A DNA stretch of 64,000 nucleotides from contig NIVC01000037.1 in the NCBI GenBank assembly GCA_002269645.1, positions 620,001 through 684,000 on the forward strand. Direction: 5' to 3'. This DNA comes from Macrostomum lignano (Eukaryota). Each line of letters starts with the position of its first letter. Positions within the stretch are counted from its first letter, which is position 1. The position numbers and the translations under genes are program-made. The notes below the pieces were generated by a model, which did no database searches, was not told where the DNA came from, and was given only the letters and a program-made list of their open reading frames with translations. Positions 25,396 to 57,380 of the stretch are shown piece by piece.

Positions 25396-26378
25396 TACAA
25401 GAAACAATCAAAAAGTTCAGTCACTTTCCAAACTAAAATGCAACTGTTAATCATCCTGCACTTTCTCAACAAAGTTCCCACGCAGTGATATGCACTTGGC
25501 CCAGCGCTCTGGTAGCTTCTGAATGTCCGCACCTCTTCTCTTTGAACCTCTTTCTCCTCCTTCAGCTGGTGCAGTGTGACAGGAGTCTCGCGTGACCGTC
25601 CGCTTCTCAGGCAGCTCACTCAGCAGTACTCTTTTCCGATCCCAGAAGATGGTGCCCATCCGCTTCTTCATCGATGGCACTGTCTTGGCCTCCAGCGGTG
25701 GGGGGCTCATCGGGGCGATTCCACTGCTTGCTTTGAACTTTGGTCTCCGGCTCGTACATCGATTCGACTCGACATCGACTCGTCTCCCGTCAAGACAGAG
25801 TCGAGAAACTCCTCTTGGCGGTATTTGATCAGGTGGAGCAGGTGCTGAAAAGTCTGCATCTGGAGCCAGGAGTTTCGGCACGCATATGGCACAAACCTTC
25901 AACATTCCCAGTTGGGCTGGACAGCACGCTGCCATAACTGATGCCACAGGCCTCTGCTATCTCAGCAATAGTCACTCGCCTGTCCTCGTCAAAAAGGCTC
26001 TGGACATTGGCGACGACACTCTGGCTGGTGGAGGTCCTGGGTCTGCCACTGCGAGGTTCATATTCGAAGTCACCTTCGCCTTCTTCGAAACTGTGAATCC
26101 AGCGGATCATGGTGCGATATGAAGGCGCAGACTTGAGTTCCTTTGTTGCTGTGCTCAGCCTGGCACGTATGGCTTGGCTTGAAACTGATATAGACACTCA
26201 TTGGTAGTGAAGAAAAATGTAGTAGATTCTCGAGCTAAGCAAGACTGGCTTCAAAAATCTGTTTAAGTAGGAGACATACTCGTAATTAGTCTATAGTAAC
26301 AACTACAATAAATTTAAGGAAAAGCCCTATGTGTAGAAATAATTAAGCAGTAACAGAACTTTTTGATCATCCCTCATA
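25396..26378 (-). mobile_element. Internally deleted, decayed mariner transposon
   Basis: TA-bounded TIRs TACAAGAAACAATCAAAAAGTTCAGTCAC (25396) and reverse complement TATGAGGGATGATCAAAAAGTTCTGTTAC (26378). Transposase pieces RW..SFEEG..D.EYEPRSGRP, DRRVTIAEIAE, CVPKLL, VLTGDES, KRMGTIFWD, LPERWAKCISLRGNFVEK; the HDNA and YSPDL regions are missing. Confidence 0.88.
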
Positions 26379-28839: not shown

Positions 28840-31800
28840 TCATCCTGCATTGTTGCCTGCCCTTCCAGCCGCTCCCTGTACCGTGAAGGTGTTCATAGCG
28901 TTGGCGAGGTCGTCAACTCTACCTGGTCCGTGCTGGGCCAGCAGAATCATCTGAAAACGGAGAGGTTGGTGATGAACAGATAATGAAGTTCGTCAGTTCA
29001 CTGTCCTATTTAGCCTCAAACTAAAGAAACTCCTTAGGAACTCAAGAATAAATCAATAGTAAATATGAAGCCCATGCAAAACAACGGCCACCTTGCTGCC
29101 GAACACGAACAGCAGAGTGGTAGTCGAGCAGATGATGATGCAAGCTGCCACCAGCACGAATCGAAGCGTGGCCTGGCTGTTGGGCAGGACGTAGCTCAGC
29201 GACACTCCGATGGCGGCCATGATGAGCGTGTTGTACACGCAGATGCCGATCTGCCTGCTGTCGTTCAGCGCCTCCACCTTTATTTTGCGAGTCTCCCAGG
29301 CAAAGAAGATGCCGAAGATAAGGATGAGACCTGGTAATTAGGAGCGGAAAATTTCCACCAGACTGACTCTAATTTTGATTTGAGGACAAGCTTCATGAGC
29401 ACATGCCGGATGCTCACTTGTATGTGTATATGATTATTAACAATATTATAGGCGGCAAAATTAACTGTGATGATGTATTAGTCTCTTCTTTAGTCTAATT
29501 GTCTATCTCTGTACCCTACTATTCGAGAAATATTTTTCCAGAGTAAATTACCCTTAATTGGCCCTATTTCCCGTGCGCATGATGTGTCAGAAAGTGCTAG
29601 GATCACTGCCAGAAGCTCCTACCTTTAATGCCTACAAGAACTCCGTTCCAAACTCCCGAATTGTCCGAGCGACAGAACTCAAGTCGCTGCCTGTAGATCA
29701 CCCCGCGCTCTGGGTCCTCCTAAATTGGTTTTTAAAAACAAATGCGTACAGTGCTACACACTTGTAAATTTTCCGCTACTATTGTCAAAATTTTCTCTTC
29801 TATGCCTAAACAATATTCACGCTCGTACCACTGAAGGAAGCTGGAATGCACCCAGTTCCATTGGGTCCAGGCCAAGCCACAGGAGGAGAAGCGCGGCGTC
29901 CAGCAGCAAGAGAACCGCAACAACCGAGAAAAGATGCCAATCTTTAATAGCCTGGATGAAAGTGCGATTTATATTTTAGAAGGCAATAATAGAAAAAGAA
30001 ATAAAATGATTGCTTGTAATAAGAAAAGCCACTCACCACTCGCTTGAGGCGCTTGTTGGTGAAGATGACGTGCACCCGCCACGTCTTGGCGAACATGGCC
30101 CCAAACGCACACGAGTATCCAGCAGCCAGACAGCAGGTCTGAGTCCAGCACAGAGACACCCCCGTGAAGCTGCCGCCATTCAGAGCCATCGCGATGCAGC
30201 TGCAGTAGCCGAGCACACAGCCGAGAGCGATCACGAGATTCACGTTCGGAGAGCTCATCTTGATCAGCTTCAGATTTCGGTACCACAGGTTGACGCACAC
30301 CGACACGACAGCGAAGCCGATTCCCACTGCGCACAGGACGAGACAGGTGGTGCTGGCAGACTGGCTGACCATGATTCTCTCGTTCAGCACCACCGGAGAG
30401 TCGATCGGAGGCTTGTCGCCAGCGAACTGCAGACTCTGCTTCCACACCGTGACGTTTGTAGCGGGGTCGAAGTTCGCGACAGGGACGGCTACATTGTCTG
30501 AGGGTTGAGGGACAGTTTTAAGTGAGCCTTGCTGGGCTTGCAGCGAGCTTTCTTTGGCATGGCAATGCGTCACAATTCGACTGATACCTCGGATTTGAAA
30601 GACCACGACCTGTCCGATGCGGTCTCCGTTCTTGTCGAACTGGACGGGGCCCTGAAAAACAATGTGGCAAAGAAAAAGTGCTTTGAGTTAAATGGTACTA
30701 CGATATTTTCTTATTTTTATCCAAAACTCATTTTGAATAACCAGTAGCTGCATTCAGGGAAAAAATGTTTTGATATGAGTAGTAACTGAGAAATCTATCT
30801 TTTAGCGCTTTTAAAGCATTTTTTTATATTTTTAACATACTTCCAGACCATGGAAGTTCTGACTGCGAATGTGTTCCAGAAGGCTTGTTTTGAAAGAGCT
30901 GTTTCCGAGGTCTAGGCTGGAACTATAGTCATGCAGCTGGAGGGTGTCGTTGATGGCCAGGGCCGCAGTGGTGAGGGTGTCGAACACGCGAGCCACCGAG
31001 TTGTTGCTAGATGTCCATTGGCCAAACTCTGCCTTATAGTCAGCGAACAATTCGTCCATTGTCTGAAGTTTATTTACGCTCATATGTGATTTAATAATTA
31101 GTCATTATTATACTAAAGTGACCAGTCATGATTCCATTGTCTTACAAGCCCCGTGTTAGTTGGTGGCGCCTTGAAGTTTGGATTGGCCATGGCTGTATCA
31201 AAGATGATCGCATTTTGCACAGCTTTGCTCTTCATTTCCAGGGTACAGTCCCCCGTTGGGGCTGTAGCTGGCAGGCCATGCCATCCGCTGAAAATCCACT
31301 GGTACTTTGGACCAAACAAGTTGTACTGAAAAATCTAGTTTTTTCAAAGTTTGGGATTGTTAAACTAGATATCAGTGAAGTGGCAGCCTAAGTATTAAAT
31401 AAGCAGTTTTTCATTGTCACAGCAGACTGTAACTTCTGACTAGGAAAAAATCCTTCAAAGAGCTGCATGGTTTAAAAGTTGATAACCGCGGATTGAGAGT
31501 CGCGGGGTGAGGCAAAGTTACACTGGATCGTACATGATACGGTCACAAAGAAGCTGAATTTCATTGAGGCTACCCGTTTTGACACGACACGAAGCACTTT
31601 GGATGCACTTACGAGGCATTCCATTGGCTCCGCTTCTATCGATGAATAGCGAAAAGCAACAAATATTCGGACGTCATCGACCTGAAAATTGATGCAAAAA
31701 ATGGAAGCATTCTGAGGAACAATGATTTTGAAACAGTTTCCTGAAAATGTGCAAACCTTCATTCTCTCAATAATGTCGCGTAGGGTGCTAGTGAAAAGAC

Positions 31801-32687
31801 CCTTGTAGACAATGGTGATGTTGCTGGCTGCGATGACAGTCTCGAAACTGATTCCAACCTGTATTTATCAAATAAATGTTTCGTCATGAGTTGCGAAATT
31901 GTGGATTAAATATTCTGCAAGCAGAGACTGACAAACCGGATAAATCTGATCGGCCTCCGTAATTAACAGACCAATTTTGCGCCACTTGTGTTTGATTAAA
32001 ATTTGTTTGATTTGCTCATTGTACATCGCATGCGTCATGAAGAGCCGTGTGTAGGTAGTGTACATCGATTTGTCTGACAGAAGTGGCGACGCGTTCGCAT
32101 AGGACAACTGTCAAGTTTATAGACGAAGGAAGTAAGTAGTGCTGGTATGAGAGTAGTCATTTTGACTGCTTTGTAATGAATAAAACTAAATGCACCGGCA
32201 GTCCTGCACTCACAATCGGAACATGGTAGAGCCTGCAGACATCGGCCACGACCTGAGACTGTTGTGAAAATAGTATGCCCAGAATAAGAGCCTTGTTCGG
32301 CTCTTTGAAGTAGCCTTCAATGAACGCCTTGGTGGCGCTGCCGGTGTCTTCCTGGAATGAATCGTAAACTGTTTGATGCGTGTTAATTCATCGGCATTAA
32401 TCGGTTATACAAAAACTTACGTCTAGTGCGCACTGGTAATGTATTTTAAGTCGAAACGTTGGAAATAAGTCGGTTCGATTGTTGATGTAGGGCAGGTAAA
32501 ACCTAAGCGCAGTCTCCTGCACTCTGCGCTCACCACTGGGCATCACGGTGCAGATATTGAGCAGCGCAATTTCAGTTCTGTTGTCGTCAGAAGCAACCGG
32601 ATCTGACGCAACATCACAAGTCACGACTGTCCAAGCAAGGCTGGACAGAAGCCAGACAGTCAGGTTGCGAGTTTCGCCGCACAGCAT
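28840..32687 (-). CDS. GABA-B-receptor-like class C GPCR, copy A (13 exons, about 750 aa)
   Basis: Exons 32687-32421, 32351-32214, 32107-31937, 31858-31757, 31681-31613, 31334-31146, 31062-30841, 30651-30588, 30497-30037, 29951-29829, 29719-29623, 29330-29092, 28950-28840; continuous frame. Signal peptide, Venus-flytrap region (LSYANASPLLSD, GPKYQWIF.GW), no cysteine-rich domain, 7TM motifs typical of GABBR (IKMSSPNVN, GAMFAKTWRVH.IF, IKG|LILIFGIFFAWETR, ALNDS.QIG..VYN). Confidence 0.9.
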
Positions 32688-34773
32688 CCAAGAATAGTGT
32701 TACTCAAATTTGCTCTTAATCGAGCCGGTATAATGAGAAAAGGAACAAAAACTCAGTCTCATCAGCTGATGAATAGTTGCCAATCTAGCAAGTTGAACCC
32801 CCTATTCCATCACTGATTGGTTAGTACTGAGCAATGCAAAGTAGCCAATCAGATCTGTAGTTTTAGCAGCAAAAATCAGCAATTTTTCGATAGCAGAGAT
32901 TCAGAGCTCAACCACAGAGTTCCCGTTCAAAATTTTAACCATCGTTATGCATCGTATGGTGGCGCAGGCTGATCAGCTGAGCACTGTTGTGAGACAGATT
33001 GAAGCCTTCAGGGTTCAACAGTCAACCGAATTCCGACTGACTACCTTGCAAGAGATGCAGAAAATTGCAGAAAATTCCTGCATGTAATATTTTAACCACA
33101 TCACTGGTGGGGATAGCTCGCTCTCAGCCGTCAGATCTGCTTGACGCGCTTGGAACAGAATCAGTGCGACAGCATCTAAAGCCTGCATGACCTTACATGA
33201 CCAACACGAGCCTTTTGAAGAGCTACTAAAACTATGGCTAGAATACCAGCTACTCCTGTGACTCAATTTTGGGATCTAGAAATTGAGATCCAAGGAGAGA
33301 GAAGAATACTCGTAGTTTACTGTATAGTTTTAAACTAGTGAAAGATCTGCAGATGAACAAAACCTACTTAGACTTGCCGTGTAAATGTTTTGGTTAAAGT
33401 TGGCGAATTTTCTTTCTAAATAATCAGACCCATTAAAGAGAATATCAAGGTCGTTGACTTCATTTTCTGTACGCAGGTTTTTTATAGAGTTAAAGGCTTA
33501 CAAAAGCAAATAAAATCAGCATGTAGAAGGCCTACAAAAATTGAGTACAATTGTAGAACTATTGTTCCCGCAAAAAATCCTTTTTAAAGCTTTTTATTTG
33601 CATATCATTTGAATTATCGGTACAAGCGTTGGTTTGGATCCCAGCAGCGTACTTCATGACAAAAATTGACGAATAAAACAAGAGATGCAATGTAATACTT
33701 TTTTATTTTCGGTTAGGGAACGTAAATAGTCAGTTTTAGACAAAAAACGCTAATGTAGGGGGTCATTAGTTGTCTCGGTTTTCATTACCTGCTCCTCTGC
33801 TTGGAAATCAATCGCCTCGATCACAGATACTAAAATGACTAGATGGGCCACGCCGGCATATATTTAGTAAAACAGCTTTCTTCAGTAGCAAAGAAGAATA
33901 CATAAGCTATTTTATAAAAATAAAGTCAGCTGAAAGGACTTTAAGAGGTTTAGAAGCCCAAGCTTGCAGGCGTAAACAACTTGCTAATTGGTTCAGCAAT
34001 AATGTACATTAGCCAGTCCACTGAAATGTACATCGCAGCTTTAGGCTGGAATTCCGAGAAAGGCAATAAAATTTGGGGCGGGGCGGGGGGTAGTGTGGAA
34101 AGGCGCGGTTGGGGTTTAAGCTCGGGGGTACGGGCTAAGAGCTAATAAATGAGCCTTGTCTCAGGGACTACTAATATAAGATAGTGAAAAAACGGATTTC
34201 TATGTTCAATAATAAATTCTAGGGAGCACTAGAAAAAACCAGCGTCCAACTTTTTCTGCATGATTTGGCCAGTTTCCCGTCCCGTGTTTTAGTAGTCCCT
34301 GGCTTGGCTTTAAAATTCATAAAAATTACTTTTGTTTAACGTACTACTGAACTGAAAGTAGCTTACACGCGAATGTATTGAGTGGCCCATCTTAGTTATT
34401 CTAGTATCTGCGGTCTCGATAAGCGTGCCGGACCAACTCTTAATTTACATTGCAAGGTATTGACAAGTCTCAGCAATTCACAACATTGAAACCTAATCGG
34501 AGAGCCATTGAAAACCATTGCAAAATTTTAGTATCATTCGATACGGCTTTTAAAAGCGAACTTCAAGAGACGAACTTCGAGAGAGAGCACTGAGCAATCA
34601 ATGCAAAACTGAATGGAAAATTATGAAATTGAATGTCAGCTCGCCGAAATAGAGTGCGAGTTATGTTCAAATTAAACTGAAGAAGGTGTACACAGATCTT
34701 TTCACTCCTACCAAATTTCTGATACTGCTTACTGATGCTTCAATTTCGATTGTTGGACAGCACTATGGTACAA

Positions 34774-34855
34774 GAGTGTCTCTTGTTAGACAGGGGTGTC
34801 TCTTGTTAGACAAAGGTGTCTCTTGTTAGATAAGGGTGTCTCTTGTTAGACAGGG
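34774..34855. repeat. 20-bp tandem repeat x4
   Basis: GGTGTCTCTTGTTAGACAGG-type unit. Confidence 0.9.
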
Positions 34856-35026
34856 AGGGAAAGCGAGTGAACTAATTGATCTGGCAGAATTTTCCAGCTT
34901 CGTCTTTACTGATATGGAACAATCAATGCGAAAAAGAAGCTAGGAGGCTGGCGATAAAAATAGACTCGGGAGGCTGACGGTTTTACTTTTAGCGCGTTAC
35001 TATGTTAAAAGACCTTGAGGTCTGGA

Positions 35027-35260
35027 GCCAGGAGCGTCGCCACCGGGGGACAGGGGGTCACGTCTCCCCCAGTAAAAGCTATGGGGGGGCATAATAGTTT
35101 GAACCCATCGCCCACATTGGAAATCAATAATTTTGCTTCAGAGCGCCAAAATAGAGAGCCTTAAGCGCCAAAAACGAGTGTCTGTGGCGCCAAAGTGAGT
35201 GCTTGGTTGCGGCACCAAAATAAGTGCCTGCGGCGTCACAGCGAGTGCTAGCAACCCCGA
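35027..35260. mobile_element. Fragment of a non-autonomous element related to 41032-41337
   Basis: Begins CCAGGAGCGTCGCCACCGGGGGG, which matches the reverse complement of the end at 41310-41337, and carries degenerate GGCGCCAAAA.GAGTGC repeats complementary to the 21-bp repeats at 41119-41290. Confidence 0.45.
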
Positions 35261-36038
35261 TTCCCCAAATAATGTAGGAATTAGTCATGTAAGTACTCGT
35301 AGAATTCTTGGCTTTCAGCCTCCTCCCCTTCTACTATAAAATCCATGCCGAGGACCCTGCCTGGAACTTTAAAATTCAACTCTTTGAAAGCAGACAGAAG
35401 TGACGCTAAAGCGTTACAATCGAACGTACTCAATCCCAGTGAGGAGAGCTGTGGTTTATGATGGAGGAAAATCTTTCAATTTTTTTAAATTCACTGACAA
35501 TTTGCAGCTGCATACGTGTAGTCTAAATGACAATATTTAGTTAACTTCTCGTTGCTCACTTTTTACGTTTTTTCACAAAAGAATAGTTTAACAATACATT
35601 GTTTCTCAGTTTTTTGTGACAAAAGCTACATTTCTGGTGAGAGTTCTAAGTTTTCTATTTGTGCATTAAATTTAGTTACTACGAGTAATTTAGGTACACA
35701 GTAATCCAAAAGCCTCTAAAAGAATCGCATGAATTCTATAATCATCTACGACAAATCTAAGGCGCTCAACGCGTTTCTAGCGAACCTACTTCCTACAATA
35801 CTCGTGAGCCTTGCACACAAAAATATTCTGAATAACTAAAAACCAAACCTATGACTAAAACTACGCTTAATTATGCTCAATTCTAGAAATCTATCTGCTA
35901 GCTAAATTTTCGAGAACAACGGAAATTGAGTCTTTTCATTGTTATAATTTTTTGCAAGCAACTGGACGTTGCATGGATTCCAAACTTCAGACTGTTATTT
36001 CAAAAAGCCCCTCGTCCAATTCGATCTCGAGTCTTGAC

Positions 36039-39000
36039 TCAGCCACTGGTCTCCGCAGCATTAGCCGTGACGCCTTGGGTGGTGCCCGGCATCGCAAACG
36101 TGTTCATGGCGTTGGTGATGTCGTCAACTTTTGTGGGCCCGTGTTGAATCAAAAGAATCATCTGAAAAAATATCGAGTTGTAAAGTATAATTGAAGGACG
36201 ATGGACACCTCGAGTACAAGGACCGCTACACTCGTACATCATACAGATTTCGAAAAGATTTGCTCTTTGCATAGCGCTGAATGCGGCTTCAAAATAGAAA
36301 AATTCAGCCAAGAAAAATCCATCTAAAACGATGCATCTCAACTACAGCATTTCTATGACAGAGTATGGTTCTTTATAGAGCTCGCAGCTGACTACCACCA
36401 GCTACACTAAAGGCTTCAACGGCACCACCTTGCTGCCGAACACGAGCAGCAGAGTGGTAGTCGAGCAGATGATGATGCACACGACAACCAGCACGAATCG
36501 AAGCGTGGCCTGGCTGTTGGGCAGGACGTAGCTCAGCGACACTCCGATGGCGGCCATGATGAGCGTGTTGTACACGCAGATGCCGATCTGCTTGCTGTCG
36601 TTCAGCGCCTCCAGCTGGACTTTGCGAGTCTCCCAGGCAAAGAAGATGCCGAAGATGAGGATGAGCCCTGCAATGCGAGCGAATACAATGGAATGTCGGG
36701 GTGACATGACAGTTATGATTATAATAATTTTTGGGGTCCCTTGACACGAAGGCTACCCTGCAATCAGGTCGAGAAAAGCATGATTGTCATTTTTCAAATC
36801 ATTCAGCTAAACTGATGTTTTGCGAACTCGATGTGTCCATTTTATTAACCGACTCAAACCAACTGGAAGCATGAAGACATCCTGCAATCACTCAGATAAT
36901 TAGATGGAAAATTGGACAGCTAAGTTTAAAGGTACCCATTTCTCGATGCTGTTTGCCTATTAAAATAATTGATTGCCCCGAAGCAGCCCATGATGGAAAG
37001 GTTTGCATAAGTGCTCGTTCTCTCAAGGCGATGAAATAGCATAATTATTTTGCATTTATATAAATAGCTTGCATGAAGCTAGAACAATGCAGAGATCTGT
37101 TGAAAAACACTAGTGTGCAAGATGTTCACCACCTTTGATCCCAAGAAGAATTCCATTCCACAACGTGGTCAATCCAGACTGGCAGATTTCCAGGAAAGGC
37201 TTGTATAGAACTCCGAGCTGCGAGTTCTCCTAGAATTGAGAAGGTCCTGAAAGTCACCTTTATGTACAGAGGAATGGCAGAAAAATGCTCGGCTAAAATG
37301 CTTTGAGACGCACCCTTTTTGGAAACAGATGCAGCTCCAGCTGCAGTGGATCCAGAATAGACCAGATGACGAAAACCACAGCATCGAGCAGTAAGAGAAT
37401 AGCAACCACAGACAGCAGGTGCCAGTCCTTAATAGCCTGAAAAAAACATTCCAACAAATTCAAGCGATGCATCAAATACTAAAAGGATGGCAAATGGTCG
37501 ACTTCAAAAAAAAATTGCAGTGAAGAACCTTTATGAAAAAGATCGAATTCCAATATTCTAATTATCAAGACGACATGTAAACTTAGCTGCTTATACTGAA
37601 GGATGACAACTCACCACTCGCTTGAGGCGCTTGTTGGTGAAGATGACGTGCACCCGCCACGTCTTGGCGAACATGGCCCCAAACGCACACGAGTATCCAG
37701 CAGCCAGACAGCAGGTCTGAGTCCAGCACAGAGACACCCCCGTGAAGCTGCCGCCATTCAGAGCCATCGCGATGCAGCTGCAGTAGCCGAGCACACAGCC
37801 GAGAGCGATCACGAGATTCACGTTCGGAGAGCTCATCTTGATCAGCTTCAGATTTCGGTACCACAGGTTGACGCACACCGACACGACAGCGAAGCCGATT
37901 CCCACTGCGCACAGGACGAGACAGGTGGTGCTGGCAGACTGGCTGACCATGATTCTCTCGTTCAGCACCACCGGAGAGTCGATCGGAGGCTTGTCGCCAG
38001 CGAACTGCAGACTCTGCTTCCACACCGTGACGTTTGTAGCGGGGTCGAAGTTCGCGACAGGGACGGCTACATTGTCTGAGGGTTGAGGGGTCAGTTTTAA
38101 GTGAGCCTTGCTAGGCTTGCAGCGAGCTTTCTTTGGCATGGCAATGCGCTACAATAAGACTGTTACCTCGGATTTGAAAGACCACGACCTGTCCGATGCG
38201 GTCTCCATTTTTATTGAACTGTACAGGACCCTGGAAGAAAAAGATATTTCAGTGTGTTTCAGCTTATATTACTCAAGTAAAGTACTTCACTGACAAAGTT
38301 CACCGACAAAGTTAAGATCACACGCTGTTTCCTCTCTTAGTATTCCTTCTATCAGAGTTTCTCAAATGCTCGATTCCCGATACTTTGAATCTGGTTATTT
38401 TGTACTTTTTTTCTGGCAGTCAATTAGCTCCTTACTATTGAGAACTGAAGTGAGTACGGTGTCCGTACAGTAGTTGTGATATGGTTCATCCTAGCTCGTA
38501 ATTAAATAATTAGAGATCAAGTAACGAATATGGCAGCGAAATGACGTGATGTGATGTACGAGCTACATAAGCGAGAATTGAAAGTCACCTCAACGCCATT
38601 AAAAGTTTGATGGCGAATATTTTTCAATAGGCTCGTCTTAAATGAGCTGTTTCCGAGTTCCACTACAGGACTGTACTCGTCACGCTTCAGCGTTTCGTTA
38701 ATGGCCAGGGCAGCAGTTGTTAATGTGTCGAACATGCGAGCTGCCGAGTTGTTGCGTGAAGTCCATTCACCGTACACTGATTTGTATGCGTTGTAGAGGT
38801 CATCGAGGCTCTGAAATCCGAACACGTGTAAGGTAGGCGTGCTAAAACAATTAAAATCACTGGTGCCTCAAGACTCTTCCCAACCGTCATCAAATGAAGC
38901 CGATTTCCATGTGATCACACTGCTTTTAGATAACTTTTTGACGTTTTGTACATCAGGCAAGTGATTTGATGTATGTGCAGTTGATAGCGGTGTGAACGAG

Positions 39001-40615
39001 GGCTCAGTGCTCAATTGTTTTTTCCTCTTACCAGGCCAGTTATGCTGGGTGGCGGCTTGTAGTTGGGTTCGGCCATCGAGGAGTCAAAAATGATTGCGTT
39101 GTGCACCGCAGCTTTCCTCATTTCCACTGTGCAATCACCAGCCGGTGTTGTAGCCGGTAAACCGTGCCATCCGCTGATTATCCATTGGTACTTTGGGCCG
39201 AAAAAGTTGAACTTATATATCTGAAAAAATGAATACCCTTGATTTATGATTTATAGTTAAGTTGTAATTGGAACTACGAGTATTCTGGATAGCCGTCGAA
39301 ACACTTACCAGACACTCCAACGGTTCGACCTCTAGAGAAACATAACGAAAGGCAACGAATATCCGGATATCATCTGCCTGGAAGTGAAGAAACCCCCCAC
39401 GGTTTTGTCTCCACCAAATATGCAAAGTTTTAAACTAATTTTTTGCAAATTCTATACACTTTAAATAGGAATAACTGCACAGTAAACGCGTATAGCTTAC
39501 TATAAGGCGCTGCATCATCTCTTGGCTTGTGGTTGTGTAGAGCACCTTGTACAAAACCGATATATTTCTCCTGGCAATCAGATTTTCAAATTCAATTCCA
39601 ACCTGAAAATTGGAACTTTAACAGCTGTACTTTTACTAGTTAAGTAGACCCTGAGCCCTAGATCTAGGCGAGATCTCTAGAGGCGATTGGCTGTTTTTCG
39701 TCACGAGCAATTTAACTCCCTGTTTATGTCGCTCATGGAAATTAACCAATTGAAACCCGGATGCAGGACGAATACTAACCGGGTAGATCTGGTCGGCCTC
39801 CGTGATCAACAGGCCAATCTTGTGCCACTTATGCTTTAGCAAGATCTGGACGATCTCCTCATTGTAGAGCCCGTGCGTCATAAACAGCCGACTGTAGGTT
39901 CGGTAGCGAGTCTTGTCCGACAGCAGCGGCGACGCGTTGGAGTAGGCCAGCTGAAAGACGAGGGACAGACGGTCTGTGAATAGGCAGCCAGATTTAAAGT
40001 AACAATACGATTTAATTTTCTTTTTATTCAAGACAAGAAGACAACAAAACAGCTCAAAGTATTTTGTATTTCGAGGATTGAAGCATTTTGTACTTCGAAA
40101 TCGCGAGCCGTCAAGCTTAAATTTAATCTGTCAAGACGCTTATAAGCTGTTTACCTCAACTCGAGAAAACTCACCATGGGGACATGGTAGAGCTTGCACA
40201 CGTCGGCCACTACCTGAGACTGTTGCGAGAAAAGAATCCCCAAAATCATAGCTTTGTTTGGCTCGCTGAAGTAGCCGTCGATAAACGCCTTCGAAGCGCT
40301 GCCTTTGTCTTCCTGCAGATGGATTTATTCATATTGTACGATCAAATATGCCAGTATATTTCAGTTTTAATAACTCACATCGATAGCGCACTGATAGTAA
40401 ATCTTGAGCTTGAATGTCGGGAACAAGTCAGTCAGGTTGTTGATCAGCGGCAGGAAGGCTCTGAGCGAGAGCTCCTGAAACCTTCGTTCTCCAGAAATCG
40501 GCCTTACGGTGCAGATGTTGAGCAGAGCAACCTCAGTTCGGTTGTCCTCAGCTTCGCACTGCTCAATCAGGCAGACCGCTGCACTGAACAGCAGCAGGTG
40601 GCGCCAGAGACACAT
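36039..40615 (-). CDS. GABA-B-receptor-like class C GPCR, copy B (13 exons, about 744 aa)
   Basis: Exons 40615-40379, 40312-40175, 39950-39780, 39602-39501, 39377-39309, 39220-39032, 38810-38589, 38230-38167, 38075-37615, 37436-37314, 37229-37133, 36667-36429, 36161-36039. Internal exon lengths (138,171,102,69,189,222,64,461,123,97,239) equal those of copies A and C; open frame throughout. Confidence 0.9.
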
Positions 40616-41031
40616 GCAATTTTGTCTTTGTATTAGGAATTTTTTTAATACTGAACTCGATTTGCTGAGATTTTTCGCGCGGCAGAATTACTGAGTCATT
40701 ATTATGCTCTTGGATTTACAAAGACTAATTGAGCCTGGATTTGTTCGGATCAGTAGTCACTTTTATGACTTTTATGCAACATGTGGCCTTCTTGAAAAAG
40801 TTCTCTGATTGGATCTGGACGTTACAGCCGGTTATTGGCCAAAATGGCGGATCAAAGAAACGTTTTGTTGGGGAAAAACTACGAGCATATTTCTCCAAAA
40901 GACTTCCCTGTACAGAAGTTGTAGCTCGTATGGTCCTACTCACGACTGGCTTAAGTAAGATGTCAAGACTTTTAATATGCGCAAATATGGTTGAAAGAGC
41001 TGAATAAATATCCATTCTTGGTATGTACTTC

Positions 41032-41337
41032 CTGGGGCGCCATGGATTTCATGGTGGGGGGACAAAGCCAAGAGTTCTACATGATTAAATTCCTACATTG
41101 TTTAAGGAATCGGTGTTGTTAGCACTCATTTTGTCGCCGCAGGCACTCATTTGGCGCCACAGGCACTCATTTTGTCACTGCAGGCACTCATTTTGTCACC
41201 GCAGGCACTCATTTTGGCGCCGCAAGCACTCATTTTGTCACCACAGGCACTCATTTTAGCGCCGCAGGCACTCATTTTGGCGCTGCAGGCACTATGCTTT
41301 GTCCTGCCCCCTTCCCCCCCCGGAGGCGACGCACCTG
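41032..41337. mobile_element. Non-autonomous element with internal 21-bp tandem repeats
   Basis: About 8 copies of GCAGGCACTCATTTTGGCGCC (41119-41290) between GC-rich ends; related copy in opposite orientation at 35027. Confidence 0.45.
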
Positions 41338-41376
41338 TGTACCACCACCTCCTGCGGATTCAAAGATGCAGTTCCA

Positions 41377-42249
41377 GGCGTTTCCCTTCCGGCGTTTCCC
41401 TTCCGGCGTTTCCCTTCCGGCGTTTCCCTTCCGGCGTTTCCCCTTGCTGTTTCTTCTCTGGTTGAGGTTCCACTGACTGGGATTCCACTGACTGGGATTC
41501 CACTGACTGGGATTCCACTGACTGGGATTCCACTGACTGGGATTCCACTGACTGGGATTCCACTGACTGGGATTCCACTGACTGGGATTCCACTGACTGG
41601 GATTCCACTGACTGGGATTCCACTGACTGAGATTCCACTTACTGGGATTCCACTGACTGAGATTCCACTGACTGGGATTCTACTGACTGGGATTCCACTG
41701 ACTGGGATTCCACTGACTGGGATTCCACTGACTGAGATTCCACTTACTGGGATTCCACTGACTGAGATTCCACTGACTGGGATTCTACTGACTGGGATTC
41801 CACTGACTGGGATTCCACTGACTGGGATTCTACTGACTGGGATTCCACTGACTGGGATTCTACTGACTGGGATTCCACTGACTGGGATTCCACTGACTGG
41901 GATTCTACTGACTGGGATTCCACTGACTGGGATTCTACTGACTGGGATTCCACTGACTGGGATTCCACTGACTGGGATTCTACTGACTGGGATTCCACTG
42001 ACTGGGATTCCACTGACTGGGATTCCACTGACTGGGATTCCACTGACTGGGATTCCACTGACTGGGATTCCACTGACTGGGATTCCACTGACTGGGATTC
42101 CACTGACTGGGATTCCACTGACTGGGATTCCACTGACTGGGATTCCACTGACTGGGATTCCACTGACTGGGATTCCACTGACTGGGATTCCACTGACTGG
42201 GATTCCACTGACTGGGATTCCACTGACCGGGATTCCACTGACTGGGATT
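41377..42249. repeat. 14-bp repeat (about 5 copies) followed by 15-bp minisatellite (about 52 copies)
   Basis: GGCGTTTCCCTTCC, then GGGATTCCACTGACT; source of the GIPLT and ESQSV ORFs. Confidence 0.98.
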
Positions 42250-42630
42250 TCTCTAAGCTACGTCAGCCTTATGTACACTGTTTATACCGGACTCAGAGCA
42301 GCTTCATACTCAATCACTGTACGACTCAACTCTTCTCCATTCATCATATAAACTGTCTACTCGCAGTATCTCAACCTAGATTAAAAAATCAATTGCTCAT
42401 CTGTTTTATTTATTTAAGCATGCTCTGTTCTGCCTCTTCGCATCCTACAATTACTACTTCGAAAGTAGAGTAAGCAAAAGACGATAGTTGTGCATTGCAG
42501 GTGCGTTTTAATGCTGCTAAATTCTCTAATAGTGGGCAAATAGAGCCCTTTGTGTATTTTGTGCCTGCGCATTTTTTAAATTGAAGCTAACAAAAATTCT
42601 CTAATTAACAGCAGCAACTCTGTCTCTCAG

Positions 42631-42946
42631 AAACTAAAGCTACTCTCGCTGTTAACTAAAGCTACTCTCGCTGTTAACTAAAGCTACTCTCGCTGTTAAC
42701 TAAAGCTACTCTCGCTGTCAACTAAAGCTACTCTCGCTGTTAACTAAAGCTACTCTCGCTGTTAACTAAAGCTACTCTCGCTGTTAACTAAAGCTACTCT
42801 CGCTGTCAACTAAAGCTACTCTCGCTGTTAACTAAAGCTACTCTCGCTGTTAACTAAAGCTACTCTCGCTGTTAACTAAAGCTACTCTCGCTGTTAACTA
42901 AAGCTACTCTCGCTGTAAACTAAAGCTACTCTCGCTGTTAACTAAA
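42631..42946. repeat. 22-bp minisatellite, about 14 copies
   Basis: AACTAAAGCTACTCTCGCTGTT. Confidence 0.97.
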
Positions 42947-43129
42947 ATCTACTAAAGTCTAAAATCTAAAGTCTAGAAGCTACCAATCGAAAGTATCACC
43001 AAAGAAAATCGTTAATTACCAAGCATTTGCTCTTCAACAGTTCAATAATTAAACTGAGTTTGTCTTCCGCTCCCTCAGTTTCAGGACTTCAATCGCTCCA
43101 GCGGCGCACGCGATTCGCTTTGAACCTGG

Positions 43130-46100
43130 CTAGTTGCCACTGGTTCTCTCGGCATTAGCGGGGGTGCCCGGCATCGCAAACGTGTTCATGGCGTTGGTGA
43201 CGTCATCAACTTTCGTGGGCCCGTGTTGGATTAAAAGAATCATCTGAAAAATGGAATTGAAACCTGCATGACATTCTGAAAGCTGAGAGCCCGATGATTC
43301 GTCCGTAAATGACTACATTGAGCTTCAATGGCACCACCTTGCTGCCGAACACGAACAGCAGAGTGGTAGTCGAGCAGATGATGATGCACACGACAACCAG
43401 CACGAATCGAAGCGTGGCCTGGCTGTTGGGCAGGACGTAGCTCAGCGACACTCCGATGGCGGCCATGATGAGCGTGTTGTACACGCAGATGCCGATCTGC
43501 TTGCTGTCGTTTAGCGCCTCCACCTTTATTTTGCGAGTCTCCCAGGCGAAGAAGATGCCGAAGATGAGGATGAGACCTGCAATGCAGTGAAAAAACGAAA
43601 AGTTGAACCTGAGATTTCTGGAACTCGGTAATTAGCCATTCTATCAGGACTGGTTAGGACTAATTTTGAGAGTCAACCTGATCATAGCTCTGCTATGAGG
43701 CCGATACATGTAGTTAAAACTGCTTCTAGTTGGTAATTTGCTCAACTAGTATCCCCATAGTGCAAAGCTTTGGTAGTCCGAAGGGTGACATAATGAGCGC
43801 CGTGATAAAGAAGAAAAATGACATAATGACATGCGGCTGCCTGGTGTAATAACCCGCTGAAAAACCACCTGGATAAGCAGGCGAAAGCCTTCATCGTTAG
43901 AAACGCAGTCTTACTGACGAGCCGGTACAATAGACTTCACCTTTAATGCCCAGAAGAATTCCATCCCATATGGCGGCCATTCTAGACCGGCAAGCTTCAA
44001 GGCGCGGCTTGTAGATTATTCCGAGTTCAGGGTTCTCCTTAAATTTGTTGCGTGCGTTGTTTCAGAAATTGCGGTGCTTTTCTTTTAACTAAATTTCTGA
44101 AGACTTTTAGGTACGTACCTCCGGTGGATACAAGTGCACTTGAATATGAATTGAATCCAAGACAGACCAAAGGATGAGAACAGCGGCGTCAAGCAGGAGA
44201 AGAATGCCAACAACGGAGAGTAAGTGCCAGTCTTTTATTGACTGCAAATTGAAAGCAAAAATCTTCTCCAGAAGTTAGCCATAAAAATTTTATGCTCGAA
44301 ACAATTGCTCAAGACTGGTCTGGGAAAGGTCAACCACTCACCACTCGCTTGAGGCGCTTGTTGGTGAAGATGACGTGCACCCGCCACGTCTTGGCGAACA
44401 TGGCCCCAAACGCACACGAGTATCCAGCAGCCAGACAGCAGGTCTGAGTCCAGCACAGAGACACCCCCGTGAAGCTGCCGCCATTCAGAGCCATCGCGAT
44501 GCAGCTGCAGTAGCCGAGCACACAGCCGAGAGCGATCACGAGGTTCACGTTCGGAGAGCTCATCTTGATCAGCTTCAGATTTCGGTACCACAGGTTGACG
44601 CACACCGACACGACAGCGAAGCCGATTCCCACTGCGCACAGGACGAGACAGGTGGTGCTGGCAGACTGGCTGACCATGATTCTCTCATTCAGCACCACCG
44701 GAGAGTCGATCGGAGGCTTGTCGCCAGCGAACTGCAGACTCTGCTTCCACACCGTGACGTTTGTAGCGGGGTCGAAGTTCGCGACAGGGACGGCTACATT
44801 GTCTGAGGGTTGAGGGGACAGTTTTAAGTGAGCCTTGCTAGGCTTGCATCGAGCTTTCTTTGGCATGGCAATGCGCTACAATAAGACTGTTACCTCGGAT
44901 TTGAAAGACCACGACCTGTCCGATGCGGTCTCCGTTCTTGTCGAACTGGACGGGGCCCTGAAAAAATATTTATTTTCACAGCTTCGACAGTTCTGAAACT
45001 TACATTCTTGTCGACTAGGATTCAGACCTTGGATTAGTGTATGAACTTAAGCGACAATTATAGCTCAATCTCTCTCCCGATTTCCATACATTGTTTTGCT
45101 CTTGTTTTCATTCCACATTGGTTTTTTATCACTATCATATTTCACGTACATGTAGCTCACTATACTATTGATCACTACAAAAAATCCATCCCAAGGGGTT
45201 TTTAGTCACCTCTACGCCATTGAATTTTTGTTTGCGAATATTCTGCAGTAGACTCGTTTTGAAGGAGTTGTTTCCAAGCTCCAGACGAGGGCTGTAGTTG
45301 TACAACTGCAGCGAATCGTTGATGGCGAGGGCAGCCGTTGTCAGTGTGTCGAACAGTCTAGCGGCCGTGTTGTTACCTGTGGTCCATTCCCCAAATGCCG
45401 CCTTGTAAGCTCCATAGATGTCATCCAGTGTCTAAAGCAAATCAAAGTTTCATTTGCAGGGTCAGACAGGCCAATATTTTTAATAACAGCTCCATTTTCC
45501 CGGATTTTCTGTCGATGAAACTAATTAAATATTCTAATATTTACTGTAAAAGGTAATGCTCATGCTGCCTTGGAGAAAAGACTCAATTGTTCCTTTGATA
45601 ATCTCACCACCGTCGTTTTGCTGGGTGGAGGCTTGTAGCTAGGGTCAGCCATTGCGGAGTCAAACAGTATGGCATTATGCACGGCAGTTTTCCTCATATC
45701 CAGTGTGCAGTCTCCCATCGCTGAGGTAGCTGGCAGGCCATGCCACCCACTGAAGATCCATTGGTACTTTGGTCCGTAGAGGCCGTGCTTGTAAATCTGT
45801 TGGTGACGAATATTTATCATCACCATCATAGATATCAACATCGAGAGTTTTGGAAAACGAATCGGAGTCTTCCAGCTGCGACTTACCTCGCATTCCAACG
45901 GCTGGGCTTCGATGGAACGGTACCGAAAAGCCACGATTATTCTCACATCCTCGTCCTGAAATCATTTCAGAAAATATATTGATGGAACTCAGTTTCAATT
46001 CATTGCAGAGGAAAATTTCCAGCCAACCATATTCGCCGTATGTCACTTATTCTTACTACCCTTAATACCTTTAAACGCTGGATAATCTCTTTCGTATCGC

Positions 46101-47416
46101 CAGTAAAAAGCGCCTTGTACAGGATCGAAATGTTTCGTTCGGCGATTAGAGTTTCAAAATTGACTCCAACCTGAAATATACAAAAAACTTTGCGTTTGTC
46201 GAGTAATTGCATGAATTTGATTCCCAGTTGACCTAGTCAGGCATATCTTGCTCAAACAAGCACGAAACAATAACTAGGCGCAACTGGACATCCACGACTG
46301 GCCAAGGAATAAAACAGTGTGGTGTCAAATCGCTTAAAGTTGAGGGTCCCTATAGTAAGTGCTTCAACCCAGCTTGGTCTGCAGTGGGTCAACGTAGCGA
46401 GCCACCCGTTCTGTCAGCATTAGGACGTCCCGCAGCGGCTCAGGGCAGTAAGGCTTGCTTATGGCCATGCTAAGTACACAACATTCAGCTGCGCCTCGTG
46501 CGCCTAACCAATATCACATCAGACACATCATCACGAACCGGGTAAATCTGGTCGGCCTCCGTGATCAACAGGCCAATCTTGTGCCACTTATGCTTCAGCA
46601 GGATCTGGACGATCTCCTCATTGTAGAGCCCGTGCGTCATAAACAGCCGACTGTAGGTTCGGTAGCGAGTCTTGTCCGACAGCAGCGGCGACGCGTTGGA
46701 GTAGGCCAGCTGAAATTAAACACTTGAAATGTTTCTTGAAAGCATACGATTCTCCCAGTGTCCGTGCATCCACCAGCTGCTTTTTGGAGGATGCGCAACC
46801 TTCATGGATTACAAAAGTTACTTTGTGAGCATATTATTCAACCCAAAGCTTATTATTTAAATTATGTATGTAGATGGGATTAATAAAATTCTTGAATTTG
46901 CACATAAAAAATATTTTTTGTTGAATTACAACAGCTCAGACAGTTTCAACTACTCACCATCGGCACATCGTAGAGCTTGCAAACGTCGGCCACGATCTGC
47001 GACTGCTGCGAATAAGTTATGCCAATAATGACAGCCTTGTTCGGCTCCTTGAAGTATCCATCTATGAACGCCTTGATGGCGCTGCCCGTGTCCTCCTAGA
47101 AAGTTTCGTGCTCATGAAATTTGAAAAAAGACAACGGAATTAAACAAAAAAATTCTGATCGATGATGCAACCATCTCACATCGATAGCGCACTGATGGTA
47201 AATCTTGAGCTTGAATGTCGGGAACATGTCGGTCAGGTTGTTGATCAGCGGTACGAAGGCCTTCAGCGCGAACTCAAAGAACTTGTGCTCACCAGTGACA
47301 GGGCTCACCGTGCAGATGTTAAGAAGAGCAACCTCGGTTCGATTATCTCTGGCGCAGCACAGAACTGTCAGATTGGCAGCTGCGCACACCTGGAGCAGGC
47401 AGCGCCAGAGTTGCAT
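43130..47416 (-). CDS. GABA-B-receptor-like class C GPCR, copy C (13 exons, about 741 aa)
   Basis: Exons 47416-47180, 47095-46958, 46709-46539, 46170-46069, 45955-45887, 45796-45608, 45431-45210, 44957-44894, 44802-44342, 44241-44119, 44037-43941, 43576-43338, 43243-43130. Same exon lengths and phases and same GABBR-type motifs as copies A and B. Confidence 0.9.
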
Positions 47417-56858: not shown

Positions 56859-56899
56859 CTGGGCTTACAAGGGACAAAACAGTATGAAACTGCTCGAAA

Positions 56900-57380
56900 T
56901 TTCTACAGAATCAGCAGACTAAATACTACAGAATCAGCAGACTAAATACTACAGAATCAGCAGACTAAATACTACAGAATCAGCAGACTAAATACTACAG
57001 AATCAGCAGACTAAATACTACAGAATCAGCAGACTAAATACTACAGAATCAGCAGACTAAATGCTACAGAATCAGCAGACTAAATGCTACAGAATCAGCA
57101 GACTAAATACTACAGAATCAGCAGACTAAATGCTACAGAATCAGCAGACTAAATACTACAGAATCAGCAGACTAAATGCTACAGAATCAGCAGACTAAAT
57201 ACTACAGAATCAGCAGACTAAATACTACAGAATCAGCAGACTAAATACTACAGAATCAGCAGACTAAATGCTACAGAATCAGCAGACTAAATGCTACAGA
57301 ATCAGCAGACTAAATACTACAGAATCAGCAGACTAAATACTACAGAATCAGCAGACTAAATACTACAGAATCAGCAGACT
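56900..57380. repeat. 23-bp minisatellite, about 21 copies
   Basis: CTACAGAATCAGCAGACTAAATA. Confidence 0.98.

What the first reader, a model, noticed from the sequence alone, without database searches (positions are those of the whole stretch)
28840..47416. Tandem triplet of intact, non-canonical GABA-B-like class C GPCRs: candidate lineage-specific chemoreceptor family
Seen in sequence: three head-to-tail 13-exon genes with identical internal exon lengths and open frames (about 750/744/741 aa). The 7TM is GABBR-type and there is no cysteine-rich domain, but most Venus-flytrap exons differ strongly between the three copies while TM1-3 and TM6-7 are almost invariant. Established: canonical GABA-B is a small, conserved set (GB1, GB2, plus GB3 in insects), while tandem expansion with variable ligand-binding lobes is the hallmark of class C chemoreceptors such as vertebrate V2R/T1R, which belong to the mGluR/CaSR branch. 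Inference: this may be an independent sensory/nutrient receptor expansion from the GABA-B branch, diversifying the ligand pocket on a common signalling module.
Basis: partly seen in the sequence, partly recalled or inferred. Interest (0 to 1): 0.78.

Follow-up and report, generated by a model that had tools for sequence, protein, structure and literature searches.

The report
Three tandem GABA-B-like orphan receptor genes
Three intact neighbouring genes encode orphan receptors of the GABA-B type whose only close relatives are in the flatworm Macrostomum; their near-identical membrane segments come from gene conversion between the copies, and nothing here shows that they are smell or taste receptors.

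Summary
On the minus strand there are three head-to-tail genes: A 32687-28840, B 40615-36039 and C 47416-43130. Each has 13 GT-AG exons, identical internal exon lengths and an open frame of 750, 744 or 741 aa. Each encodes signal peptide, Venus flytrap and 7TM, with no cysteine-rich domain and a 36-40 aa tail. They are GABA-B-type: human GB2 scores 4.5e-91 and GB1 7e-86, against 1e-16 for mGluR. They are not GB1 or GB2 orthologues. Their only close relatives (40-47% identity) are uncharacterised Macrostomum lignano proteins, which are also tandemly arrayed.

Exon 9 and exon 12 have dS of 0-0.11, whereas other exons are saturated. Intron 8 is 92-98% identical, whereas all other introns are unalignable. 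The homogenised tracts alone have raised GC3 (0.76-0.89). This indicates GC-biased gene conversion on old duplicates.

The variable exons are under purifying selection (dN/dS 0.06-0.31). Positions matching the GB1 GABA pocket are non-canonical but nearly the same in all three copies. A chemoreceptor role is neither supported nor excluded. This is a new member of a known kind, of modest interest.

The parts
28840..32687 (-). Gene A, 750 aa, 13 exons: 32687-32421, 32351-32214, 32107-31937, 31858-31757, 31681-31613, 31334-31146, 31062-30841, 30651-30588, 30497-30037, 29951-29829, 29719-29623, 29330-29092, 28950-28840
   Evidence: Spliced model with all introns GT-AG and an open frame. Pfam ANF_receptor 9.5e-34 and 7tm_3 5.9e-49. 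PDB best hit GABBR2 at 4.5e-91.
36039..40615 (-). Gene B, 744 aa, 13 exons: 40615-40379, 40312-40175, 39950-39780, 39602-39501, 39377-39309, 39220-39032, 38810-38589, 38230-38167, 38075-37615, 37436-37314, 37229-37133, 36667-36429, 36161-36039
   Evidence: Spliced model. Pfam ANF_receptor 1.2e-30 and 7tm_3 6.9e-48.
43130..47416 (-). Gene C, 741 aa, 13 exons: 47416-47180, 47095-46958, 46709-46539, 46170-46069, 45955-45887, 45796-45608, 45431-45210, 44957-44894, 44802-44342, 44241-44119, 44037-43941, 43576-43338, 43243-43130
   Evidence: Spliced model. Pfam ANF_receptor 9.6e-35 and 7tm_3 1.1e-48.
30029..30659 (-). Gene-conversion tract in A: exon 8, intron 8 and exon 9 (end of the flytrap, linker, TM1-3, ICL1, most of ICL2)
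   Evidence: 97.6-98.4% DNA identity to B 37609-38233 and C 44334-44965. Exon 9 dS is 0-0.018. Intron 8 is 92-98% identical while other introns are at shuffle level. GC3 is 0.79 and intron 8 GC is 0.51, against 0.37 for the other introns.
37606..38241 (-). The same conversion tract in B
   Evidence: The longest identical A-B run in the CDS is 509 nt, against a maximum of 56 in 2000 permutations.
44333..44966 (-). The same conversion tract in C
29082..29333 (-). Older conversion tract: exon 12 of A (second half of TM5, ICL3, TM6, TM7). Counterparts are B 36413-36683 and C 43322-43591.
   Evidence: 94-96% DNA identity. dS is 0.07-0.11. GC3 is 0.84-0.89. The flanking introns are unalignable.
39774..39956 (-). 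Exon 3 of B, homogenised with exon 3 of C (46533-46715) but not with A
   Evidence: 97.8% DNA identity. Protein identical, dS 0.078, against saturation versus A. GC3 is 0.86 in B and C, against 0.60 in A.
40616..43129 (.). B-C intergenic spacer filled with minisatellites (21-bp x8, 14-bp x5, 15-bp x52, 22-bp x14)
   Evidence: Tandem Repeats Finder. The 400 nt upstream of the three ATGs are not alignable.

Best explanation
The window carries three intact, tandemly arranged paralogues of an orphan class C GPCR of the GABA-B type. Each protein has a signal peptide, a Venus flytrap, a direct linker with no cysteine-rich domain, a 7TM domain and a short tail. Together with uncharacterised Macrostomum lignano proteins they form a clade of their own. 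The clade lies outside canonical GB2 and does not join the GB1 flytrap. The source genome is therefore probably a macrostomid flatworm other than M. lignano.

Shown: the duplications are old, because synonymous sites are saturated and introns are unalignable. All copies are kept under purifying selection. Patches of the genes have been repeatedly homogenised by GC-biased gene conversion. These patches are exon 8, intron 8 and exon 9 in all three copies, exon 12 in all three, and exon 3 (and partly exon 13) between B and C. As a result the three receptors share an essentially identical TM1-3 and TM5b-7 core and identical intracellular loops 1 and 3. They differ in the flytrap, TM4 and ECL2.

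Inferred mechanism: like other class C receptors they act as dimers. Without a coiled coil or an ER-retention motif they probably form homodimers or mixed dimers among the paralogues. A small ligand would close the flytrap, and the signal would pass to a G protein through a GB2-like 7TM. The TM3 motif FAKTWRVH and the ICL3/TM6 motifs AWETR and LNDS are retained. The ligand is probably not GABA bound in the canonical way, because the residues matching GB1b Ser153, His170 and Glu349 are Ala, Phe and Ser/Thr. Ser130, Tyr250 and Trp278 are retained, so a small carboxylate-bearing or amino-acid-like ligand is plausible. Whether the receptors serve neurotransmission, nutrient sensing or external chemoreception cannot be decided from the sequence.
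For: - Gene models are intact.
- Domains were found by Pfam.
- Similarity is GABA-B-type: GB2 4.5e-91, GB1 7e-86, GPR156 1e-25, mGluR 1e-16. Alignment shows the TM3 and TM6 motifs conserved.
- An exhaustive HMMER search of 1.84 billion representatives with exon 9 found no relative above 49% identity, apart from a 64% fragment. The four best hits are all M. lignano.
- Full-length identity is 40-47% to M. lignano proteins and about 30% to everything else.
- In the NJ tree the window genes join M. lignano with 100% bootstrap. The GB2 clade (98%) excludes them. A flytrap-only tree does not join them to human GB1.
- An M. lignano contig holds at least three head-to-tail copies in 22.7 kb.
- A 209-nt repeat is shared with that contig at 85% identity.
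- Per-exon dN/dS and dS were computed, as were intron identities.
- GC3 and intron GC are raised only in the homogenised tracts.
- A permutation test was run on identical runs.
- Exon 9 is only 43-46% identical to M. lignano paralogues, so its 100% identity among A, B and C is not intrinsic constraint.
- Pocket positions were mapped, using the residue list from PMC6429233.
- The clade shares the TM7 variant F-G-S/G-K and the tail motif HGPxKVDD.
Against: - There is no expression or transcript evidence, so start codons and one acceptor choice are unconfirmed.
- The trees are neighbour-joining on long branches. Support above the flatworm clade is weak (13-71%). Full-length canonical GB1 and a named GB3 were not in the data set. 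A fast-evolving flatworm derivative of GB1 or GB2 therefore cannot be strictly excluded.
- Pocket mapping rests on a 25%-identity alignment. A His lies three residues after the position aligned to His170.
- Structure prediction of the spliced proteins was not possible with the tools allowed.
- The source organism is inferred, not identified.
Confidence: 0.72

Rival explanations
1. This is a lineage-specific chemosensory or nutrient receptor family that arose from the GABA-B branch. Selection diversifies the flytrap ligand pocket, while a common signalling module is kept constant.
For: The genes are in tandem here and in M. lignano, and the clade is lineage-restricted. The extracellular parts (flytrap and ECL2) differ, while the intracellular loops and the TM core are identical. 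Gene conversion confined to the signalling half is what one would see if selection tolerated homogenisation there but not in the flytrap. From my own knowledge, clustered protocadherins show a comparable pattern.
Against: dN/dS in all variable exons is 0.06-0.31. Positions matching the GB1 pocket are nearly invariant among the three copies. There are only three copies in 64 kb, and at least seven 90%-identity clusters in M. lignano. No expression data exist. Conversion confined to slowly evolving exons can also arise passively, because conversion needs high identity.
Confidence: 0.2
2. They are the flatworm's working metabotropic receptors for GABA or a related transmitter or metabolite. On this view they are fast-evolving descendants of GB1 or GB2 that lost the coiled coil and act as homodimers or mixed dimers in neurons.
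For: The flytrap is closer to GB1 (1.3e-35) than to GB2 (3.9e-24), while the 7TM is closest to GB2. Ser130, Tyr250 and Trp278 are retained. The Nematostella study argues that His170 is dispensable, and only three of its eight homologues have a predicted coiled coil (10.1101/621060).
Against: Ser153 is Ala and Glu349 is Ser/Thr in all copies. The clade does not group with GB2 or the GB1 flytrap. Flytrap identity to GB1 and GB2 is only 20-26%, lower than for the other invertebrate GB-like proteins. Work on parasitic flatworms found no GABA-B GPCRs and GABA-A-like pharmacology (PMC6114109).
Confidence: 0.2
3. The three copies are haplotype or assembly duplicates, or decaying pseudogenes.
For: The 461-nt exon 9 is identical between A and B. 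The region is rich in repeats.
Against: Most exons have saturated dS and 56-85% DNA identity. Introns differ in length and are unalignable, and the spacers differ. All 39 exons are open with GT-AG borders, and dN/dS is well below 1.
Confidence: 0.02
4. The invariance of the TM exons reflects very strong purifying selection on the protein alone, without gene conversion.
For: TM1-3 and TM6-7 are the best conserved parts of GABA-B receptors in general.
Against: Synonymous sites are also identical (dS 0-0.018, against values above 0.6 elsewhere). Non-coding intron 8 is 92-98% identical and tolerates a 1-nt indel. GC3 is raised only in these tracts. The same exon is only 43-46% identical to M. lignano paralogues.
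Confidence: 0.02

Closest known systems
Uncharacterised Macrostomum lignano class C proteins (PAA63463.1 / A0A267EPJ4; A0A1I8IYD3; the receptor part of A0A1I8GNL1; A0A1I8JGM2)
   Same: Same architecture and 40-47% identity. They share the TM7 variant F-G-S/G-K in place of F-x-P-K, and the short tail motif HGPxKVDD. They are also arranged head to tail.
   Different: Flytrap identity is only 31-35%. The three window genes are closer to each other than to any M. lignano member. The triplication is therefore specific to the source lineage, or the matching M. lignano subgroup was not sampled.
Canonical GABA-B subunits GB1 and GB2 (human; PDB 7c7q, 6uo8, 4mqe)
   Same: Flytrap joined directly to a 7TM without a cysteine-rich domain. 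The motifs FAKTWRVH (TM3), AWETR and LNDS are conserved. These are the best PDB matches.
   Different: Overall identity is about 30%, and 20-26% in the flytrap. There is no coiled-coil tail, no RSR-type retention signal and no sushi domains. Only 3 of the 7 mapped GABA-contact residues are kept. The genes lie outside the GB2 clade.
Non-canonical 'GABA-B subunit 1-like / 2-like' receptors of marine invertebrates (Asterias, Acanthaster, Branchiostoma, Ptychodera, Glandiceps, Lamellibrachia, Montipora; the eight Nematostella homologues)
   Same: Similar length (about 700-800 aa). They are multi-copy GABA-B-type receptors, often without a coiled coil. Only some keep the GABA-binding residues (10.1101/621060).
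   Different: Identity is only about 30%, and no supported sister relationship was found. Bootstrap is 71% with one Lamellibrachia protein in the full-length tree, and that grouping is lost in the flytrap-only tree.
Vertebrate V2R and T1R chemoreceptors
   Same: Class C receptors in tandem clusters with variable flytraps.
   Different: V2R and T1R belong to the mGluR/CaSR branch and have a cysteine-rich domain. From my own knowledge, V2Rs number tens to hundreds of genes with reported positive selection. Here there are three genes under purifying selection, and the pocket-homologous positions are conserved.

Membership tests
Class C (family 3) GPCR | A 7tm_3 transmembrane domain preceded by a periplasmic-binding-protein-type Venus flytrap (ANF_receptor) | tested here: met
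   Pfam PF00003 covers 4-251 of 251 positions with E about 1e-48. PF01094 has E 1e-30 to 1e-35. Both are far above the gathering scores in all three proteins.
GABA-B-type branch of class C | Closer to GB1, GB2 and GPR156 than to mGluR, CaSR or taste receptors, with no cysteine-rich domain between flytrap and TM1 | tested here: met
   GB2 4.5e-91, GB1 7e-86, GPR156 1e-25, mGluR4 1.7e-16. The 45-residue linker has no cysteine (sequence).
GABA-B-type branch of class C | Conserved 7TM motifs of GB1/GB2: the Lys of FAKTWRVH in TM3, the Asp of LNDS(K/R) at ICL3/TM6, AWETR in TM5/ICL3, and F-x-P-K in TM7 | tested here: inconclusive
   The first three are identical or conservative in the alignment to GB2. 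The TM7 motif is F-G-S-K, with Pro lost, in all three copies and F-G-S/G-K in M. lignano.
GB1 (GABA-binding subunit) | Orthosteric residues Ser130, Gly151, Ser153, His170, Tyr250, Trp278 and Glu349 in GB1b numbering (PMC6429233) | tested here: not met
   In order A/B/C the residues are S/S/S, A/S/S, A/A/A, F/F/F, Y/Y/Y, W/W/W and S/S/T. Trp65 fell outside the aligned region.
GB1 (GABA-binding subunit) | Groups with GB1 in a phylogeny | tested here: not met
   In the flytrap-only NJ tree the human GB1 flytrap sits among echinoderm and hemichordate GB-like proteins. The window clade is separate, with 23-26% identity. A full-length GB1 was not available.
GB1/GB2 heterodimer | Long C-terminal coiled coil, plus an RSR-type ER-retention signal in GB1 | tested here: not met
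   Only 36-40 residues follow TM7. The tail holds no RSR and is too short for a coiled coil of GB1/GB2 length (sequence). No coiled-coil predictor was run.
GB2 (G-protein-coupling subunit) | Groups with GB2 in a phylogeny | tested here: not met
   The GB2 clade holds human, insect, tick and nematode sequences, has 98% bootstrap and excludes the window genes.
GB3 (insect-type third subunit) | Groups with GABA-B-R3 | tested here: inconclusive
   No protein named GB3 was retrieved. One clade, containing a fly protein (Sarcophaga) that is neither GB1 nor GB2, is probably GB3. The window genes are not in it.
Class C chemoreceptor family (V2R/T1R-like in function) | Tandem multigene expansion | tested here: inconclusive
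   There are three copies in the window and none elsewhere in the 64 kb. One M. lignano locus has at least three copies, and there are at least seven 90%-identity clusters in that species. A genome-wide count in the source genome was not possible.
Class C chemoreceptor family (V2R/T1R-like in function) | Diversifying selection on the ligand pocket | tested here: not met
   dN/dS is 0.06-0.31 in every variable exon. Pocket-homologous positions are nearly invariant among the copies. Site models were not feasible with three sequences and saturated dS.
Class C chemoreceptor family (V2R/T1R-like in function) | Expression in sensory cells and response to external or nutrient cues | not testable with these tools
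   No transcript or expression resource for the source organism was available.

The most novel reading that the evidence does not exclude
Macrostomid flatworms evolved their own small family of sensory or nutrient receptors from the GABA-B branch. Parasitic flatworms (flukes) have been reported to lack GABA-B GPCRs. In this family, region-restricted gene conversion actively keeps one shared G-protein-coupling module, while the flytraps, TM4 and ECL2 are held apart by selection. That would be a receptor-cluster design analogous to clustered protocadherins. It would also be an origin of class C chemoreception independent of the mGluR/CaSR-derived V2R and T1R families.
Probability: 0.15. Interest if true: 0.65.

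Novelty: new member of a known kind. Interest (0 to 1): 0.33.

Why it matters
- GABA-B-type receptors were reported as undetectable in flukes (PMC6114109). This clade shows that the free-living macrostomid lineage has GABA-B-type receptors of its own and duplicates them in tandem.
- The locus is a clear small-scale case of patchy GC-biased gene conversion. Conversion makes one half of a receptor look 'invariant' while the rest of the gene is anciently diverged. This is a caution against reading domain-wise identity among paralogues as differential selection.
- If the copies prove to have different ligands but one signalling core, they would be a compact system for studying how class C flytraps retune specificity.
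- As it stands, this is an orphan receptor family of a familiar type with an ordinary evolutionary explanation.

Tried and rejected
- The plus-strand reading gives no receptor-like frames. The genes are on the minus strand.
I used the single-exon translation window:30037-30495:- instead. No model of the flytrap cleft was made.
- The word-indexed homologue search was nearly blind for these proteins. It returned 4 and 3 hits and missed proteins that were in the query alignment itself. It therefore could not give a family count.
- A proline dehydrogenase query to name the source organism was inconclusive. The best hit was an unnamed Logan contig from run SRR28338163 at 84% identity, and the best named hits were molluscs at 63-64%.
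- Rfam found nothing in the window, so the repeat shared with M. lignano is not a known RNA gene.
- Canonical GB1 was not among the 150 best representatives. GB1 entered only as the flytrap sequence recovered from a PDB alignment.
- Literature searches found no description of this flatworm clade.
- I considered and rejected haplotype or assembly duplication, pseudogenes, retention of intron 8 as coding (B and C would be frameshifted), and pure purifying selection as the cause of the invariant exons.

Full report
**1. What is there.** The finding's interval holds three genes on the minus strand. Self-comparison of the window shows three collinear copies. Two short blocks are 94-98% identical, and the remaining matching blocks are 72-84% identical. 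Plus-strand frames are meaningless. Minus-strand frames read as a class C receptor.

Using anchor peptides and a donor/acceptor enumeration I obtained complete models.
- A runs 32687-28840 (750 aa), B 40615-36039 (744 aa) and C 47416-43130 (741 aa).
- Each gene has 13 exons. All 36 introns are GT-AG and 66-465 nt long.
- Exons 2-12 have identical lengths in the three genes.
- tblastn with the three proteins finds no further copy or fragment in the 64 kb.

**2. What kind of protein.**
- Pfam gives ANF_receptor plus a full-length 7tm_3 in each protein.
- Against all PDB chains the best matches are human GB2 (4.5e-91) and GB1 (7e-86). Drosophila GB2 and GB1 come next, then GPR156 (1e-25), and only then mGluRs (1e-16).
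- The alignment to GB2 runs from the flytrap straight into TM1. The linker has no cysteine, so there is no cysteine-rich domain.
- The TM3 motif AFGAMFAKTWRVH is identical to GB2, and AWETR and LNDS are kept. The TM7 motif F-V-P-K is F-G-S-K.
- Only 36-40 residues follow TM7, so the GB1/GB2 coiled coil is absent.
- With the flytrap alone, GB1 (1.3e-35) scores better than GB2 (3.9e-24).

**3. Relatives.** The word-indexed search returned only four proteins at about 30% identity: two sea stars, Saccoglossus and Plasmodiophora.
- Among 1.84 billion representatives, 873 score below 1e-3 and only two below 1e-30. The best identity is 49%, or 64% for a 129-aa fragment.
- The top four hits are all from the free-living flatworm Macrostomum lignano and are uncharacterised.
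- Over the full length the window proteins are 40% identical to the receptor part of one chimeric M. lignano model and 44-47% identical to another. They are about 30% identical to everything else.
- A last profile search added three more M. lignano clusters and nothing from any other species.
- The clade shares F-G-S/G-K in TM7 and a tail motif HGPxKVDDxxxAM.

**4. Phylogenetic placement.** I built an NJ tree with 100 bootstraps from 80 near-full-length sequences.
- A, B and C join the M. lignano sequence with 100% support.
- The canonical GB2 clade (human, insects, tick, nematodes) has 98% support and excludes them.
- Deeper nodes are unsupported (13-71%).
- The neighbours are the many 'GB1-like' and 'GB2-like' proteins of an annelid, amphioxus, hemichordates, echinoderms, a brachiopod and cnidarians.
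- Canonical GB1 was not among the retrieved proteins. I recovered the human GB1b flytrap from the PDB alignment and made a flytrap-only tree. GB1 sits among deuterostome GB-like proteins, and the window clade does not join it. Flytrap identity is 23-26% to GB1 and 20-21% to GB2.
- A clade containing a fly protein that is neither GB1 nor GB2 is probably GB3. The window genes are not in it, but GB3 was not positively identified.

They are therefore not 1:1 orthologues of GB2, and very probably not of GB1 or GB3.

**5. Genomic context in the relative, and the source organism.**
- The M. lignano contig NIVC01001840.1 carries at least three head-to-tail copies within 22.7 kb. The tandem habit is therefore shared.
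- That locus has the same G+C content (0.449) as the window.
- It shares a 209-nt non-coding repeat at 85% identity with window 62651-62849. The repeat is not a known RNA family.
- A proline dehydrogenase gene in the window has no identical or near-identical protein in the database. The best hit is 84%, on an unnamed Logan contig.
- The source is therefore probably a macrostomid flatworm other than M. lignano. This is an inference.

**6. Why TM1-3 and TM5-7 look invariant.** Per-exon Nei-Gojobori estimates give the following.
- Exon 9 has dS of 0-0.018 and exon 12 has 0.07-0.11.
- Exon 8 is identical between A and C.
- Exon 3 has dS of 0.078 between B and C only, and exon 13 has 0.36 between B and C.
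- Every other comparison has pS of 0.45-0.9, which is saturated.

Further evidence points the same way.
- Intron 8 lies between exons 8 and 9. It is 92-98% identical and differs by a 1-nt indel, which proves it is non-coding in B and C. The other eleven introns and both flanks align no better than shuffled sequence.
- The longest identical run in the A-B coding alignment is 509 nt, against a maximum of 56 in 2000 permutations.
- GC3 is raised exactly where homogenisation occurred. It is 0.79 in exon 9 and 0.84-0.89 in exon 12. In exon 3 it is 0.86 for B and C, against 0.60 for A. In exon 8 it is 0.76 for A and C, against 0.48 for B.
- Intron 8 has GC of 0.48-0.51, against 0.37-0.40 for the introns as a whole.
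- The same exon 9 is only 43-46% identical to M. lignano paralogues. It is therefore not intrinsically frozen.

Together these are the marks of repeated, patchy, GC-biased gene conversion among old duplicates.

**7. Selection on the variable parts, and the pocket.** The variable exons have dN/dS of 0.06-0.31, which is purifying selection. I mapped the GB1b orthosteric residues (list from PMC6429233) through the HMMER alignment.

| GB1b residue | A | B | C |
|---|---|---|---|
| Ser130 | S | S | S |
| Gly151 | A | S | S |
| Ser153 | A | A | A |
| His170 | F | F | F |
| Tyr250 | Y | Y | Y |
| Trp278 | W | W | W |
| Glu349 | S | S | T |

The site is not a canonical GABA site, and it is almost the same in all three copies. 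This argues against the idea that the copies differ mainly in the ligand pocket. The test is coarse, because the alignment is at about 25% identity and there is no 3D model.

**8. Most likely working.** This section is inference. Class C receptors signal as dimers. These proteins have no coiled coil and no retention signal, and their TM cores and intracellular loops 1 and 3 are identical. The three proteins can therefore plausibly form homodimers or mixed dimers that couple to the same G protein. They would differ in the flytrap, TM4 and ECL2. The retained Ser130, Tyr250 and Trp278 suggest a small carboxylate-bearing ligand. Whether the cue is internal or external is unknown.

**9. Comparison with what is known.**
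- Multi-copy, non-canonical GABA-B-type receptors are common in invertebrate genomes. Nematostella has eight homologues. Only four keep the binding residues and only three have a coiled coil (10.1101/621060).
- Dictyostelium has a GABA-B-like Grl family (PMC1885808, listed).
- For flatworms, a fluke study found no GABA-B GPCRs and suggested that GABA signalling is purely ionotropic (PMC6114109).
- I found no paper describing the macrostomid clade.

**10. Verdict.** The genes are intact, non-canonical, lineage-restricted tandem GABA-B-like receptors. The 'invariant module' is a product of gene conversion, and pocket diversification is not seen. A chemosensory role is untested. This is a new member of a known kind, of modest interest.

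Noticed in passing
window 14689-21871 (-): A proline dehydrogenase (PRODH) gene is split into many short exons. The N-terminal exon, with a presequence-like start, lies at about 21176-21600. Catalytic-domain exons lie at 17819-18094, 17133-17438, 15117-15449 and 14689-14970. The best database match is 84%, to an unnamed Logan contig (SRR28338163). The best named matches are molluscs at 63-64%.
   Followed up: partly
window 16364-17060 and 18112-20017: Two arrays of one 25-bp minisatellite, 90-97% identical, lie inside the PRODH gene span. They produce the strongest GC skew in the window (-0.60 at 18-20 kb).
   Followed up: no
window 7733-8536 (-): A long open exon encodes a doublecortin-type domain (KKVRFFRNGDRYFRGYQFAIS...). 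I recognised it by eye and did not run it against Pfam.
   Followed up: no
window 8940-9880 (+) and 25832-26197 (-): Frameshifted remnants of mariner/Mos1-type transposases (HKWFGRFKSSHFDLADEPRKGCPRT..., FLHYDNAPAHT). One chimeric M. lignano gene model (P0007) also fuses a Mos1-type HTH to its receptor.
   Followed up: no
window 54449-54943 (+) and 56212-56910 (-): Two ETS-domain exons lie in opposite orientation about 1.5 kb apart (LWEHVLRLL...HYKF and LLLWQFLLKDLL...). They suggest a divergent pair of ETS transcription-factor genes.
   Followed up: no
window 62651-62849; related copy 8677-8805; L001 8097-8302: A roughly 200-nt non-coding repeat is shared at 85% identity with the M. lignano receptor locus. 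It has no Rfam match. It is probably a short interspersed element common to macrostomid genomes and is a useful clue to the source organism.
   Followed up: partly
window 10473-11474, 41468-42249, 42632-42946, 52866-53661, 58259-59629, 60905-62169: The window has an unusually high density of long minisatellite arrays. Periods include multiples of 4 bp, 15, 22, about 14-16, 24 and about 64 bp. Several create long spurious ORFs, for example 41299-42351 (+).
   Followed up: no
window 30498-30587 (A), 38076-38166 (B), 44803-44893 (C): Intron 8 is 90 nt, in frame and free of stops in copy A, so retention would insert 30 residues. It is 91 nt in B and C, where retention would shift the frame.
   Followed up: yes
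L001 908-1525 vs 12275-12893: In the M. lignano array, neighbouring copies about 11.4 kb apart match at 84% over the last TM exon and its 3' flank. Little else aligns at the threshold used (E<=1e-20, matches of at least 150 nt), although the first copy is cut off by the locus end. A mosaic like the one in the window may exist there too.
   Followed up: partly
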